Notes under the pieces: generated by a model
The model's database searches: none
Told to the model about the DNA's origin: nothing
The model's input: the letters and a program-made list of their open reading frames with translations, nothing else
Position numbers and translations under genes: made by a program
Assembly: GCF_046119375.1 (NCBI RefSeq)
Contig: NW_027366915.1
Coordinates: 1-64,000, forward strand
Reading direction: 5' to 3'
Length of the DNA stretch: 64,000 bases
Source of the DNA: Phyllobates terribilis
Lineage: Eukaryota
Shown here: piece by piece, positions 32,301-38,639 of the stretch
Layout of the letters: each line of letters begins with the position of its first letter
How positions within the stretch are numbered: the first letter of the stretch is position 1

Positions 32301-32530
32301 TAAAAGGTTAGCATGAGATTTATGCTGTGAAATGATCTTACCTTCTGACTTGTAAATGGCTACCTTATGCTATATTTTTCAAGCTGACAGAAAATGTAAC
32401 TTATGGTACAACTTGCAGACATGTGAAATTTTGTAAGGATTGTTTACATACGATTTGTTACATTACCTGCATTCTGTTTATTGGTTGATCAATTATCAAG
32501 CTGGGCAATTTTCTACAACCCAGTCTAGTA

Positions 32531-32789
32531 TTCCCTTCGTGTCTTTTTATTTTTCTTATTTCTTTCTTACACGTTTTTCGAATCGTGTTTTTTATGGTAA
32601 ATATTTTTGAAATAAAGTTTATAAAAATTATAAAATGTATATCTTGTTAAAGTACTCGTCGAGACGAGTAAAATAAGACCAAACATGACTATGTTTTTTC
32701 ATATATATCGAGAGAAATCGAGAAGATTCTATCAAGATGTGAATAGTGAATAAAAATGAAATGAGAAGAATAAAAAGGGACGGAGGGAG
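32531..32789. mobile_element. Stowaway MITE
   Basis: TA|TTCCCTTCGTGTCTTTT ... AAAAAGGGACGGAGGGAG|TA, i.e. a CTCCCTCCGT-type TIR with TA duplication. Confidence 0.8.
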
Positions 32790-33270
32790 TAATTTTTTTG
32801 GGTGATTATGTTAAAATGCAGATGACCGATTTCTATGAGTTATCTTGTTAACTAAACATGGATGGGCATTTATTTTTGTTGAATAGGTGGAGTAACCCAT
32901 TTATCAGTAGATGATATTTAATGCTTTGAAATACTCCCTCTGTCCCAAATTGTTTGAACAATTTGAAGTAAAGTACACAAATTAAGGAGCATTAAATGAG
33001 GAGAGAGGTATGGAAATGTGGGGGATTAAATTAATCTCAGCCAATCAAATTGAAGCATTGAATTTTTTGTATCCAATGGGAACACAGTATAATTGTGCCT
33101 AGGATAACCAACATGGCATTAAATTGTTCTTACAAATTTACCCCTGTGTACTTATATCATCTTCAACAACCCATATTCCCTCTATCTTAACTGCCATTGT
33201 AAGTGAAAAAATAGAGAATATTCAGAGTGAAAACAGAGCATTAGGGGGGGGGGGGACTTTTTATGGAGGT

Positions 33271-34867
33271 ATGGCTTCATCATTTTTAGATTTAAATGAG
33301 CTGCCAGCATGTGATGAAGAATACAGTTTATCACAGCATACAACTGGGAGTGGGGACCAACCAACAGAAGCTGTGGCAAACTCATCTGAACAGAATAATG
33401 AAGACAACCATGAAACACAACAGTTACATCATCAGCCAAACTTCAGGCTAAACAACAAGCAACGTATGCAGGTATTGAACACTATTCTCTCAAAATCTCA
33501 GGGGGGAAGTTATCACATGGTGCAATAAAGCAAATATCAGAAGAATTAAATCTGTCAAAAAGAGTAATTGGAAGGATCTGGGCAACAGCTAAGCAACAAC
33601 AAGCAGAGGGACAGAGTTTCAATGTGAACAACAAGTTCAAAAACTGTGGGAGAAAACGAATCCAAGTTTCTCAAGAAGACATTATGAGTTTAAGCATGGG
33701 GGACAGAACATGCCTGAGGGATCTAGCAAGCAAGTTAGCAATTTCAAAGAGCACATGTCACAGAATGACCAAGGCGGGAGTCATAAAGCCACACACAAAT
33801 TCCCTACATCCAGGCCTATCACCGGAGCACAAATTAACAAGACTGAGGTGGGTGCTCAGCTTGTTGCAGGGCAACACATTACAAGAAAAGAGTCAGTACT
33901 ACCCTATATATAACGTCGTCCACTTGGATGAGAAGTGGTTCTATCTCACAAAAAAGAGCACCAGAGTCTACCTAGCACAAAATGAGAAAGGCAAGTATAG
34001 AGCAGCCAGTTCAAGCAAATTCATCCCTAAGGTAATGTTTACAGCTTGCGTTGCTAGACCTAGGTTCAATGCACAGGGGGAATGCATATTTGATGGGAAG
34101 ATTGGAATCTTTCCATTCACATACAAAGAGCCAGCCAAAAGGAGTTCAAAGAACAGAAGCAAGGGGACAGTTGTAACAAAGCTAGTGGACAGAGTCAACC
34201 AGAAAGTAACTAGAGCTATGCTAATTGAACAAATTCTACCAGCCATTAGAGCAAAATGGCCTACTGATGGGATTCACAGAACAATTTTCATCCAACAAGA
34301 CAATGCAAGGGCACATATCACTCAGTAAGACAAGGAATGGCAAAACATTTTTGTCCAAGGAGATTTCACTTTCATCCTAATTCAACAACCAGCAAACAGC
34401 CCAGACTTGAACATCTTAGACCTAGGTTTTTTTAGAAGCATTCAGTCCCTAATGCATAAAAAGATGCCTAAGGATGTCGATCACATGCTAGAATGTGTAA
34501 CTGATGCATTTTATGAGCTAACCCCTTAACACTAGGCAATGTATGGATGTCATTGCAAATGGTTATGAATGAGATACTCAAATGCAAATGGGGCAATGGG
34601 TATGACATGCCACACATCTGCAAGAAGAGGCTTGGATTAGAGGGGAACAAGCCAACAGAATTGATGGCACCTACTTGGGCTATAGTAGAAGCATGGAATG
34701 CAGTGAATGCAGATGCAAGTGCAGCGGGGACATCAAATACAAATGAGCCAATGAATGCACATGCAGCTAGTACGTCTAATGCAAATGCAAACAAGAACAT
34801 AAACAGTCAAGAAGAAGAAGAAGAGTTGCTAGATGATGAGTTCCTTGATGATGACCATGAACTATAG
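33271..34867 (+). pseudogene. Mariner DD39D transposase, apparently intronless, disabled
   Basis: HLDEKWFY, KVMF..CVARPRF, FDGKIGIFPF, IQQDNARAH and SPDLNILDLGFF, with 39 residues between the QQD and NILD aspartates. Premature TAA at 34326-34328 and frameshifts near 33505 and 34525. Confidence 0.93.
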
Positions 34868-35883
34868 ATGCTTAGCTTAAATTATGCTTATGAATGCAAT
34901 GTAATGAATGTCAACACTGAGATGAAATATCATAACCACTTGTCAAGTTATGATAATCATCTCATTGTATTTTGTTGTTCAACTTGTAATATGAACCTAT
35001 ATGAACCTATTAATGTCTAGAAAGTGCAAAAATATATTCTCAGTGTCCCCAAATGAATCATTCCTCTGGCCCTAATCATACCCTAACCACGCCCAAAATG
35101 CCGCCTGAGTCATAATGACTGGTATCATATTGGGAGGTTAGGATATAATTGTTGCTCAACAGAACCACAACTCATTCTTAAAAGGGTGTCATCATTGAAT
35201 AAAAAAAGAAAAACAATCTCATAAATCTCCTAAAGTCCATCACTGATTTAGACCTATCAGTTGCCTAACTTCCCCAATACCATCCTTAGTCGTATTGACT
35301 GGTTGCATAAGGGAAGGTAGGCAACTAAATATAAAAGAAAGAGGTCTAAATCTCAGTTCATAGAGATATCATCATTGATCATGCATGAATGCAGCTACAT
35401 GTTTCCCTAAAATTGTTCATACAGCTCGGGACACAGGCAGTAAATAGGACATGGTCATGCTAATTGACAAGGCTGTATGCAACATAACATCTCAAGGGGA
35501 CATTTAAGCTTGAATAGATAAGGAAGGCAACATGCAACTCATAAAAAGGATCATGCAAGACAACAGACAATGGGGATCAAGCACGCAAACAAGCAACTCA
35601 TACTAGGGACCACTAAGCTTCAACACATAGGCAAGCAATAGGCAACTGATACTAGGGGCCATTCAGAGCTTAGGCAACAAATAACTAGCACAAAAGTTAG
35701 CATGGGCAACTCGTTGTGCCCATGCAGAATCAGTTATAGCACAAAAAATGGTAGGAGCAACCAGCTGTGCACCTACCGCGACCAATTTATCCGATACAGA
35801 CCATTAGAGAGTAAAATTTACATGCAACAACACAGGGGGACTAATTGAAATACCCAAAATACGTTGAAGGGTTAAAGACTTAG

Positions 35884-36254
35884 CTACTGTACGCTTGAAT
35901 CATCATCATCACTAATGATGATGATCTCCTTGAAGCCTGGTGGGGGACCACTCCTCGGTAGAGTAGGCTTTGGCAAAGAGGGTGGGGGGACAACCCTCTT
36001 CTTCTTCTTTGTCGGCTACTCCACCTCCACCGAGGTCTCAGGTGAGACGTGGTTACCAATTCGGCCGTCACGATGACTGCCCGAGTAGCTGTGTTTGCCC
36101 TTGCACGTGCCAGCTAGCCAATCGCATCTCAGCTCCCCGTAGTATTGGGAGCAGACATCACTGGCGCTGGGCTTCTTATCCTTGCCCTTCTCCTGTGTGC
36201 GCCGCTCATCAGAGGTTGTCCATGAGCAGTCATACGGGCCTGAGACATGGCTTC
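35884..36254 (-). pseudogene. Putative accessory reading frame inside the mariner (CCCH-like finger, NLS, Pro-rich, SIM-like tail), with one in-frame TAG
   Basis: After the acceptor TCACAG| (36254) one frame reads ...ERRTQEKGKDKKPSASDVCSQYYGELRCDWLAGTCKGKH...VEVE*PTKKKKRVVPPPSLPKPTLPRSGPPPGFKEIIIISDDDDSSVQ*. The start codon and upstream exons are not established. Confidence 0.5.
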
Positions 36255-36316
36255 CTGTGACCAACACAAACACAAAACTCTTATAAGAACAACACAAATA
36301 ACTCAGACATGGCTTC

Positions 36317-36550
36317 CTGGGACAGAGCAATCAAGCAAGGGACAGAGCAACCAAGCCAAGTGTTAACAATCCATGTGAGAGATTGAAATTCATCCCTCAA
36401 CATGAGCAATGGGGTCTCAGAGATGAATGTCAACATCCCAACATATCACAACAAACCGTAAGCAACCATGCAAGGGACAGAGCAACCATGCAAGGGACAG
36501 AGCAACCAAGCAAGGGACAGAGCAACCAAGCATGGGACAGAGCAACCAAG
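36317..36550. repeat. 20-bp tandem repeat CAAGGGACAGAGCAACCA(A/T)G
   Basis: Four adjacent copies at 36471-36550 and two more at 36317-36356. Confidence 0.95.
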
Positions 36551-37799
36551 CCAAGTGTAACAATCCAAGATAGTGAAAGATCACAATGTATGTAGCAACA
36601 GTGTAGGGGAAAGGACAGTAATCAAGCATCAAACATACACATGCAACTCATTCAGTATTTAACAAAGCAAGGCACAGAGCGATCGACATCGATCTATCAA
36701 CAATCAAGGTAAAATTGAGTGATCACACAACATGAATAACAAATGCAACCTAGCCAGGGTGTTTAACAAAGCAAGTTGTGCAGAGATCGACACCAATCTG
36801 GGAACAATCAAGGGGAAACGACAACAATCACACAACCCAATTACACATGCAAAACAACCAGGGCTTTTGACAAATCAAGACACAGACAGATCGCCATCGA
36901 TCTAGCCAGAATGAAGGGGAAACGAACTACATCAATCACACAACAAATAATACGCATGCAACCCTGCGAGGGCAATGTAGGAAATCAAGACACATGGAGA
37001 TCGACAACAGCAATAAAGGGGATTCGACATGCAAGAACAACAAGGTAATCGATCCGATCTTGAACTCAAATTTGAACTGCAAACACTCAAGATCGGCACC
37101 CAAATCAAGCCAAAACACCGATTTCAAGATCAGTACCAATATTGGGGACGAGAAACAGAGCACCGAGAAAGAAGTTCAAAGAAATTAACATAAACAGAGC
37201 AAGATTTCTGGGGATATCATCGAATAGAATTCCCAAAGGGTAAGATCGAGATTGGATTCAACCTTCATCTCAGGATCTAGTTCAATCACCCACAAGCTCC
37301 AACAAAAAAGCACCCAAATCAACCGCAGCAAAATACAGAACTGGGGACGATTTTAAGCACCCAAATCAAGCATAAAAACCACCCAAATCAACCGCAACAA
37401 AATACAGTATTAGGGACGATTTTAATCACAAAAATCAAACATAAAAAGCAGTTTTCAAGCTCAAGATCGTGATCAAATGCGACCACCGAGAGCCAGATGA
37501 AGATCGAGGATCAAGAACAAGATCAAGATCATCGATCAAGGGGAAGATCTGGATCAGAGATCGGAGGCCCAAGAAAAAATTTCGATCAACACACATAAAA
37601 AGAGCTAATCCGGGGACGAGAAAGAGGTAGAAGAAAGGATCAGACCAAGATCCATGACAAGAGAGGCGGGGATCAAGCAACGAGAGCGGCGGTGTAGGGA
37701 GTGAATTAGGATTTCGGAGGGGGAGAGAGCAGAATAAGAGAGTTCTAGAGAGTGAGGGAGTGAAGAGTGGGAGAGATCAGAATAAGAGAGGGGTAGGGA

Positions 37800-37920
37800 T
37801 AGATTTAGGGTTTCGGTGAGGAGGGTTTTTGGGCTGGGTTTGGGTTTGGGTTGGGTTAGGGATTGGGTTTGGGTTGGGTTAGGGAATGGGTTAGGGTAGG
37901 ATTAGATTGAATGTGGGCTT
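37800..37920 (-). promoter_or_regulatory. G-rich/telomere-like array with telo-box and site II motif; probable promoter of the antisense unit in the mariner
   Basis: Twelve GGG tracts at 37831-37896 (TGGGTT/TTAGGG variants); telo-box AAACCCTA on the minus strand at ~37805-37812; TGGGCT at ~37914; followed on the minus strand by a CT-rich leader (37800-37600). Confidence 0.55.
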
Positions 37921-38639
37921 TTGGGGTAGGTTTTTGTTTTTTTTTTCAGCCCAATTAATCTATGTGTAAAAATAACTAGTGTTTCTTTACAAAAATTTTA
38001 ATTTTAAAGCTACAATTATTTTTAATTAGATTTTTTAAATGTAATTAGTGAAGTTAAGTATAGTTCATGAGTATAAATTCTGTTGAAATTTGAAGATGAA
38101 ATGGTTTTGGTGGGAGAAGTAGTTGGAATATATGGGTAGTTGGGTCCGATTTGATAGTTAGAGAGAGAAATAAATAAAGTGAAAAGTGATGATGAGTATG
38201 AATAAAATATGTAAAGAAATAGGGTTATAGGGGTATTAATGGGAGAAAGAGTATGTACAAAAGAGGAAATTGTTCAAACTCAAGCGGACAACCGAAATGG
38301 AAATTGTCCAAACAAAATGCGACGGAGGGAGTATGTTCAAATATACATGATATTTTAATATTTTCAACAATTTTTATCAATCTTACTCCTAATTTAATCT
38401 CTTTTTAAATTTGAATTTCAATAATTATTCTCTTTTTCTTATACATTCCCGTAATTTCTACTCTTTATATATTATGGAAAAAAATTGCTTAACATGTAAT
38501 ATATAATTATTATTTATGGTAGGAATCATAAGACTAAAATGGTCCAAAAAACTTCATTACCCTAATCTGGATAGAAATTATTAAAAAAATCACTTACAAT
38601 AGTAAATGCAGGGAGTCAGAGATTACATATTCTATCTTA

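What the first reader, a model, noticed from the sequence alone, without database searches (positions are those of the whole stretch)
35884..36254. Mariner transposon carries a second, convergent gene: CCCH-like zinc finger + NLS + Pro-rich + SIM-like tail
Seen: between the transposase stop and the right TIR, one minus-strand frame after a CACAG acceptor gives about 122 codons broken only by one TAG (36016-36018, plausibly from CAG). It contains C-x8-C-x6-C-x3-H (CSQYYGELRCDWLAGTCKGKH, 36153-36091), an SV40-like PTKKKKRV (36015-35992), a proline-rich linker and a terminal EIIIISDDDD (35928-35899). Known: CCCH fingers follow C-x(4-15)-C-x(4-6)-C-x3-H and usually bind RNA; SIMs are a hydrophobic core plus an acidic run. 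Plant DD39D mariners are normally described as single-gene elements, while accessory anti-silencing proteins (VANC) are known from VANDAL/Mutator elements. Inference: four coherent nuclear-protein motifs in one short frame are unlikely to be chance. This may be an undescribed mariner accessory or anti-silencing factor, or a captured host fragment. The start codon is unresolved: the GCCATGT at 36248 is in a different frame.
Basis: partly seen in the sequence, partly recalled or inferred. Interest (0 to 1): 0.85.

Follow-up and report, generated by a model that had tools for sequence, protein, structure and literature searches.

The report
Gene-like cargo inside a plant mariner
A multi-copy 5.4-kb plant mariner transposon carries, beyond its original right end, a 2.9-kb stretch built like a small plant gene pointing back at the transposase, but nothing found here shows that its short reading frame makes a working protein.

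Summary
Contigs from two DNA runs show that the whole 5.4-kb unit between the outer inverted repeats, this segment included, is repeated many times, and one low-depth contig joins the two flanks without it. So the segment belongs to the mariner, not to a host gene at this locus.

The protein reading is not supported:
- A frame this long is common by chance.
- No start codon lies in frame in the exon.
- There was no Pfam CCCH match, no hit among 1.84 billion proteins, and no RNA.
- The "SIM" tail is the translation of a perfect 11-bp DNA hairpin, and the "NLS" is an (AAG)4 microsatellite.

Two complete relatives (Rhodiola, celery) are 2.8–3.0 kb and hold one gene. The window element has a decayed right-end copy 2.5 kb in. 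ORF2 therefore sits in a 2.9-kb add-on.

On the minus strand that add-on looks like a small plant gene: site II motifs, a telo-box, a CT-rich leader, a T-rich 1.4-kb intron-like stretch, an AG acceptor and a GC-balanced exon.

Best reading (0.5): cargo acquired Pack-Mariner-style and spread with a defective transposase. A true accessory protein stays possible (~0.2). First readers noted the same kind of second ORF on two other pieces of this genome.

The parts
32932..32964 (+). TA target-site duplication (32932-32933) and left Stowaway-type TIR (CTCCCTCTGTCCC..., with a TTTGAACAATTT motif)
33271..34867 (+). DD39D mariner transposase pseudogene: frameshift near 33500, in-frame stop at 34326-34328, frameshift near 34520
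   Evidence: Most family contigs appear to share the 33500 frameshift (only 42 of 584 in X1 and 91 of 466 in X2 of summed contig depth carry the extra G), about half share the 34520 frameshift, and no alternative letter is listed at the 34326-34328 stop
35402..35442 (-). Internal, decayed right-TIR copy (CTGCCTGTGTCCC...TGAACAATTT) followed by TA. It marks the right end of a 2.5-kb ancestral-type unit
   Evidence: (I2, 78% over 41 nt). No partner left TIR nearby
35443..38300 (-). 2.9-kb add-on module with no counterpart in six relatives' loci, two of which are complete 2.8-3.0 kb elements
   Evidence: Multi-copy, at about the same summed depth as the element's two ends
35884..36254 (-). The reported frame (ORF2): an exon-like, GC-balanced island, with internal TAG at 36016-36018 and terminal TAG at 35884-35886
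36091..36153 (-). Cys/His cluster C-x8-C-x6-C-x3-H
   Evidence: No Pfam match. Shuffle p = 0.0016
35995..36009 (-). (AAG)4AGG microsatellite read as KKKKR. A 3-nt length variant occurs in a sub-family about 15% diverged
35899..35925 (.). Perfect 11-bp inverted repeat (ATC/GAT trinucleotide runs) read as IIIISDDDD
36255..37645 (-). Intron-like stretch: 42% T, GATCT motifs 14 against 1.6 expected, internal 20-, 69- and 104-nt tandem repeats, ending in CACAG. It includes a 62-bp duplication of the acceptor/GCCATGTCT junction (36302-36323)
37646..37820 (-). CT-rich leader. This splice is speculative
   Evidence: reading of the sequence only, no RNA
37806..37958 (-). Promoter-like block: telo-box AAACCCTA (37813), site II motifs (37953, 37919, 37835), degenerate telomere-like repeats, no TATA
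38301..38333 (-). Outer right TIR (85% match to the left TIR, with two TTTGRACAATTT motifs) and TA duplication (38332-38333)
   Evidence: An empty-site-like joint 32930->38334 is

Best explanation
ORF2 is the terminal exon-like part of a 2.9-kb gene-like cargo module that a compact (~2.5 kb) DD39D mariner acquired. It is not shown to be a working accessory gene.

Proposed mechanism:
1. The ancestral element lay with its right end about 0.45 kb downstream of the 3' end of a small two-exon transcription unit pointing towards it.
2. Its own right TIR decayed (CTCCCTC to CTGCCTG).
3. Transposase supplied in trans paired the left TIR with the next compatible right TIR, 2.9 kb further on.
4. The intervening DNA became part of a 5.4-kb composite. 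That composite spread as a largely defective, trans-mobilised unit.

In this copy the frame is a relic: it has an internal TAG, no in-frame ATG in the exon, and two 'motifs' that come from simple DNA.

Shown: three TIR copies, TA duplications, multi-copy status of the whole unit, an empty-site-like contig, compact relatives, and gene-like anatomy.
Inferred: a host origin for the module, the order of events, and that the peptide has no current function.
For: -: summed contig depth is 118-570 (X1, X2) across 35476-37683, about the same as at the element's two ends (257-462). A contig at depth 2.5-3.7 joins 32930 to 38334 and skips 5403 nt.
- long contigs cover ORF2 at 98% identity (250 nt) and at about 85% (247-295 nt). 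A third organism label holds part of it at 96%.
- the internal TIR copy at 35402-35442 pairs with the left TIR and shares its TGAACAATTT motif.
- Rhodiola (2782 bp) and celery (2998 bp) relatives have both TIRs and one gene. Six loci align only over the transposase (~70% nt) and show no ORF2 by tblastn.
- site II motifs, a telo-box and no TATA. GATCT is 14 against 1.6 expected. T is 42% in the intron-like part against 18% in the exon-like part.
- PMC8903248 describes Pack-Mariner elements and acquisition 'by mobilisation of neighbouring insertions'.
- no family, homologue or confident fold for the peptide.
- no listed RNA run holds it, and the one RNA run laid covers only the telomere-like repeats.
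Against: - No parent host gene was found, so a host origin is inferred from anatomy only.
- Pack-TYPE elements are defined as non-autonomous, whereas this one still carries a (broken) transposase.
- The outer right end carries the family-specific TTTGRACAATTT motif twice. It could therefore be the family's native end rather than a neighbour's.
- In a sub-family about 15% diverged, ORF2 keeps its frame over 295 nt, with only one 3-nt indel. Most other diverged contigs listed elsewhere in the element show indels that are not multiples of three. This hints weakly at past coding constraint.
- The Cys/His spacing is improbable in shuffles.
- The empty-site-like contig has TTT where ATA is expected and only 23 nt on its shorter side.
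Confidence: 0.5

Rival explanations
1. The family founder encoded a real second protein: a small nuclear Cys/His protein with a basic patch and a SUMO-interacting tail. It would be expressed from its own housekeeping-type promoter, convergent to the transposase, and would help the element, for example against silencing. This copy would be a decayed one.
For: - The unit has a gene-like promoter, leader, intron and exon anatomy.
- The frame is kept in a sub-family about 15% diverged.
- The Cys/His spacing has p = 0.0016 in shuffles, and the motif triple is unique in 172 kb.
- One lesion in 122 codons is no worse than the decay of the transposase in the same copy.
- First readers saw the same kind of ORF on two other pieces of this genome.
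Against: - There is no in-frame ATG in the exon, and the proposed splice donor is weak and untested.
- ORF length is not above chance.
- No CCCH profile match and 0 hits in 1.84 billion representative proteins.
- The structure model is poor (pLDDT 55.6).
- The NLS and SIM come from a microsatellite and a hairpin.
- ORF2 is not better kept than its neighbours: about 15% divergence against 8-18% elsewhere, and the lowest summed depth in the element.
- The module is absent from relatives.
- No RNA was found.
Confidence: 0.2
2. There was never a gene. The 2.9 kb is ordinary non-coding internal mariner sequence, full of tandem repeats and telomere-like repeats. The frame, the motifs and the promoter-like words are coincidences picked out after the fact.
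For: - Shuffles reach the observed open length 65% of the time.
- Several other frames on both strands are also open here.
- The codon-usage score equals that of random windows.
- The module is packed with 20-, 69- and 104-nt tandem repeats and a telomere-like array.
- The protein language-model 'recognition' value is low for both pieces.
Against: - A sharp compositional switch falls exactly at an AG acceptor (T 42% to 18%; GC 0.42-0.46 to 0.51).
- Site II motifs, a telo-box, a CT-rich leader and GATCT enrichment occur in the right order and on the right strand.
- The Cys/His cluster is improbable in shuffles.
Confidence: 0.25

Closest known systems
Plant mariner-like elements (DD39D; Osmar/Soymar type, partners of Stowaway MITEs)
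   Same: CTCCCTC-type TIRs, TA duplication and a DD39D transposase with an N-terminal HTH. The closest proteins are 'Transposase, Tc1-like'/DUF7769 proteins of Rhodiola, Beta, Apium and Spinacia.
   Different: Described as encoding a single transposase (PMC4423477). This family carries an extra 2.9-kb convergent gene-like unit beyond a decayed internal right TIR.
Pack-TYPE transposons, specifically Pack-Mariner (Gisby & Catoni 2022, PMC8903248)
   Same: A TIR/TA-bounded mariner-superfamily element carrying non-transposase, gene-like DNA. The published acquisition route, joint mobilisation of neighbouring ends, fits the three-TIR layout here.
   Different: Pack elements are non-autonomous, mostly low-copy, and defined by identity to a host gene. 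Here a (broken) transposase is retained, depth suggests many copies, and no parent gene was found.
VANC anti-silencing proteins of VANDAL (Mutator) elements
   Same: The idea of a transposon-borne accessory protein besides the transposase (from my own knowledge, not tested here).
   Different: Different superfamily. The ORF2 pieces matched no protein family or protein at all, and no function is shown.
CCCH (C3H1) zinc fingers
   Same: The residues fit the broad C-x4-15-C-x4-6-C-x3-H pattern.
   Different: No Pfam CCCH model matches at E<=1, the canonical x7-8/x5/x3 spacing is absent, and no confident fold was obtained.

Membership tests
Plant DD39D mariner-like element | Stowaway-type TIRs beginning CTCCCTC | tested here: met
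   Left TIR starts at 32934 and the outer right TIR ends at 38331; 85% match over 34 nt
Plant DD39D mariner-like element | TA target-site duplication | tested here: met
   TA at 32932-32933 and 38332-38333
Plant DD39D mariner-like element | Transposase with a DDD triad and 39 residues between the 2nd and 3rd D | tested here: met
   QQDNARAH ... NSPDLNILDLGFF, with 39 positions between the two D when the in-frame stop is counted as one. The gene is broken in this copy
Pack-TYPE (Pack-Mariner) transposon | TIRs and TSD of the superfamily enclosing non-transposase DNA | tested here: met
Pack-TYPE (Pack-Mariner) transposon | Internal DNA with clear identity to a host gene | tested here: inconclusive
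   Gene-like anatomy is present, but no parent or homologue was found. The rest of the genome was not searchable
Pack-TYPE (Pack-Mariner) transposon | Non-autonomous, no transposase gene | tested here: not met
   A transposase gene, though broken, is present
CCCH zinc finger | Match to a CCCH profile (Pfam zf-CCCH families) | tested here: not met
   No such family at E<=1
CCCH zinc finger | Canonical C-x7-8-C-x5-C-x3-H spacing | tested here: not met
   The spacing is x8/x6/x3 and fits only the broad pattern
SUMO-interacting motif | Hydrophobic core of 3-4 I/V/L next to an acidic run | tested here: met
   IIIISDDDD, but it is dictated by an 11-bp DNA palindrome
SUMO-interacting motif | Binding to SUMO | not testable with these tools
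   Needs a binding assay
Transposon accessory / anti-silencing protein (VANC-like) | Frame kept open under purifying selection across copies, and expressed | tested here: inconclusive
   Only aggregate contig data were available. The frame is kept in one diverged sub-family, but there is no excess conservation and no RNA

The most novel reading that the evidence does not exclude
A lineage of plant mariners has gained a second, self-promoted, spliced gene. It would encode an orphan nuclear Cys/His protein with a SUMO-interacting tail that acts for the element (for example against silencing), which would make it the first two-gene plant mariner.
Probability: 0.17. Interest if true: 0.75.

Novelty: new variant of a known kind. 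Interest (0 to 1): 0.4.

Why it matters
Plant mariners are textbook single-gene elements, and published Pack-Mariners are small, low-copy and lack a transposase. This is a many-copy 5.4-kb mariner that retains a transposase gene and carries what looks like a complete promoter–intron–exon unit.

If that reading holds, the three-TIR layout would be a clear example of how a cut-and-paste element picks up neighbouring DNA by skipping a decayed end.

Such an element would also spread a housekeeping-type promoter, aimed antisense at its own transposase, across the genome. If the frame proved to be selected, it would be a new class of mariner accessory gene. As it stands, the protein claim is unproven.

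Tried and rejected
- **Host gene at this locus:** rejected. The whole 32931-38334 unit is multi-copy and has an empty-site-like contig.
- **Other copy in the window:** none.
- **Homology for the ORF2 pieces, all blank:** Pfam, the 5.8-billion-protein word search (which only admits candidates of 45-143 aa), phmmer against 1.84 billion representatives, JGI metagenome contigs, ESM Atlas for both pieces.
- **Structure:** AlphaFold2 on piece 1 alone gave pLDDT 55.6, too poor to search with.
- **RNA:** no listed RNA run holds the ORF. The one RNA run laid covers only the telomere-like repeats.
- **Relatives:** six loci around the closest transposases align only over the transposase. No ORF2 by tblastn or by motif scan.
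- **Codon-usage log-odds** trained on the window's long ORFs: uninformative. Random windows score as high 53% of the time.
- **Rfam on the element** (idea: a snoRNA host intron): nothing.
- **A MITE nested at 35442:** no partner left TIR.
- **Depth step after 35475 as evidence for short family members:** dropped. The transposase region probably also collects contigs from other mariner families, and the module's depth equals that of the element's ends.
- **Is the TAG private to this copy?** It could not be read. Only 40 of 496 variant sites were shown.

Full report
**1. The observation**

The minus strand of 35884-36264 reads as 82 codons, TAG (36018-36016), 43 codons, TAG. Every motif is at the stated place:
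- C-x8-C-x6-C-x3-H at 36153-36091.
- PTKKKKRV at 36015-35992.
- A proline-rich linker, then EIIIISDDDD at 35928-35899.
- The frame follows a CACAG acceptor ending at 36255.
- The well-placed GCCATGT at 36248 is in another frame, which closes after 39 codons.

**2. Is it more than chance?**

- Length alone is not. Dinucleotide shuffles of 35443-38331 reach a stretch of at least 147 codons with at most one stop in 65% of trials. The transposase frame (304 codons) is never reached.
- Other frames on both strands are also open over the same island.
Random windows do as well 53% of the time.
- With only four Cys and four His, the broad CCCH pattern appears in 0.16% of peptide shuffles.
- The triple of SIM-like tail, K/R run and Cys/His cluster occurs once in 172 kb of six-frame translation. 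Both of these tests were chosen after seeing the motifs.
- Two motifs are not independent protein features. The I-run and D-run are the two arms of a perfect 11-bp DNA hairpin, (ATC)n/(GAT)n, with z = -4.7.
- KKKKR is (AAG)4AGG, which varies by one repeat among copies.
- No Pfam family matches either piece at E<=1, and the canonical CCCH spacing is absent.

**3. Where it sits**

- The left TIR (from 32934, TA at 32932-32933) pairs with two right-end copies.
  - The outer one ends at 38331 (TA at 38332-38333) and matches 85%.
  - The internal one at 35402-35440 (then TA) matches 78% over 41 nt. It shares the left end's TGAACAATTT motif but has CTGCCTG in place of CTCCCTC.
- The transposase (33271-34867) is a DD39D mariner gene. 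It is broken by two frameshifts and one in-frame stop.
- ORF2 therefore lies outside a 2.5-kb ancestral-type unit and inside a 2.9-kb add-on.

**4. Is the add-on part of the mobile element?**

Contigs of two DNA runs were laid at 80% likeness or more.
- They cover the whole 5.4 kb at summed depths in the hundreds.
- The module (35476-37683) is about as deep as the two ends.
- One contig at depth 2.5-3.7 joins 32930 to 38334 and skips 5403 nt. It has TTT where ATA is expected and only 23 nt on its shorter side, so it is an empty-site-like sequence, not a clean empty allele.
- ORF2 itself is covered by a 250-nt contig with 4 differences. Contigs of 244 and 388 nt cover it at about 15% divergence, and their only indel is a 3-nt loss in the AAG run.
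- A third organism label holds 35744-35982 at 96%.
- This copy differs from nearly all contigs at 35892 (V to I), 35976 (synonymous) and 36198 (T to A).
- ORF2 has the lowest summed depth in the element. Its divergence is no lower than that of neighbouring non-coding parts (8-18%).
- The transposase frameshifts are shared by many contigs, so the family spread largely as a defective unit moved in trans.

These are assembler contigs, not reads. Depths are not copy numbers, and most variant sites were not listed. Whether the TAG is private to this copy could not be read.

**5. Relatives**

- The closest transposases are 72% (Rhodiola), 66% (Beta) and 61-64% (Apium) identical.
- Six loci with up to 10-kb flanks (a 3.1-kb contig in one case) align to the window only over the transposase, at about 70% nt. 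None shows ORF2 by tblastn or by motif scan.
- Two of them have both TIRs and are 2782 bp and 2998 bp with one gene.
- The module is therefore a lineage-specific acquisition.

**6. Anatomy of the add-on, minus strand**

- Site II motifs at 37953, 37919 and 37835.
- A telo-box at 37813 within a degenerate telomere-like array, and no TATA.
- A CT-rich leader.
- A 1.4-kb stretch with 42% T, GATCT 14 times against 1.6 expected, and internal tandem repeats.
- The AG acceptor, then an island with 18% T and GC 0.51.

That is the layout of a TATA-less plant housekeeping-type gene with a leader intron. This comparison rests on established knowledge of site II/telo-box promoters and was not tested here.

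An ATG at 37655-37653 with G at -3 and +4 is followed after 10 nt by G|GT. The donor is weak, one phase in three fits by chance, and there is no RNA.

No listed RNA run holds the ORF. The one RNA run laid covers only the telomere-like repeats. Rfam finds nothing in the element.

**7. Homology of the peptide**

Both pieces are orphans:
- No candidate in the 5.8-billion-protein word search.
- 0 hits at E<=0.001 among 1.84 billion representatives.
- Nothing in metagenome contigs.
- Nothing useful in the ESM Atlas, with low recognition values.
- pLDDT 55.6 for a single-sequence model.

Close relatives of this genome seem absent from those libraries, because the transposase also finds nothing above 80% identity. 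A lineage-restricted parent gene is therefore not excluded.

**8. Interpretation**

Best reading (0.5): a Pack-type acquisition.
- Pack-Mariner elements, and acquisition "by mobilisation of neighbouring insertions", are published (PMC8903248).
- Here the decayed internal TIR, the outer TIR and the compact relatives fit an end-skipping event that made 2.9 kb of adjoining gene-like DNA into cargo.
- It differs from published Pack-Mariners in keeping a transposase gene and in its apparent abundance. A membership test therefore fails on the 'non-autonomous' feature and is inconclusive on 'host-gene identity'.

Rivals:
- A real accessory protein (0.2). In favour: the gene-like anatomy, the frame kept in the diverged sub-family, and the Cys/His spacing. 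Against: everything in sections 2 and 7.
- Pure coincidence in non-coding repeat-rich DNA (0.25). Against: the sharp compositional switch at the acceptor and the ordered promoter-like motifs.

**9. Earlier notes of this scan**

First readers on two other pieces of the same genome reported the same kind of second ORF:
- A mariner with a second convergent unit encoding a Cys/His + NLS + SIM-like protein (s1-193834).
- A decayed antisense ORF with SIM-like motifs in a long mariner (s1-234873).

This agrees with the multi-copy result but is not independent evidence of function. I could not read those sequences.

**10. Verdict**

- Its placement inside the mariner is confirmed and strengthened.
- The claim of a CCCH/NLS/SIM nuclear protein is not supported.
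- This is a new variant of a known kind: a mariner carrying acquired gene-like DNA.
- The decisive copy-by-copy comparison could not be run with these tools.

Noticed in passing
window 32529-32791: A separate Stowaway MITE of about 260 bp (TIR arms 32529-32587 and 32733-32791) lies 140 bp upstream of the mariner's left end. This clustering of insertions is what neighbour-mobilisation models require.
   Followed up: partly
window 37824-37905: A degenerate telomere-like array (TTGGGTTAGGG-type units). It collects very high depth in three runs, including the RNA run. Loose ends read TTAGGG-like repeats.
   Followed up: no
window 36240-36323: A 62-bp tandem duplication repeats the acceptor plus GAAGCCATGTCT junction (91% match). 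One sub-family contig skips 36306-36406.
   Followed up: no
window 36319-36972 and 37301-37447: The intron-like stretch is built from 20-nt (about 6 copies), 104-nt (4 copies) and 69-nt (2 copies) tandem repeats. Several contig joints show these vary in copy number within the family.
   Followed up: partly
window 33240-33256 and 33500-33506: Long G runs inside or before the transposase gene. The frameshift near 33500 sits in one of them. By summed contig depth, only a minority of the family carries the extra G.
   Followed up: partly
L002 15839-16557 (Beta vulgaris locus): A ~700-bp foldback with AACCCTAA-like repeats and a very C-rich core lies about 4.7 kb downstream of the related Beta transposase. 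No right TIR was found for that element within 10 kb.
   Followed up: no
It could be checked as a possible source of the SIM-like tail. I could not read it.
   Followed up: no
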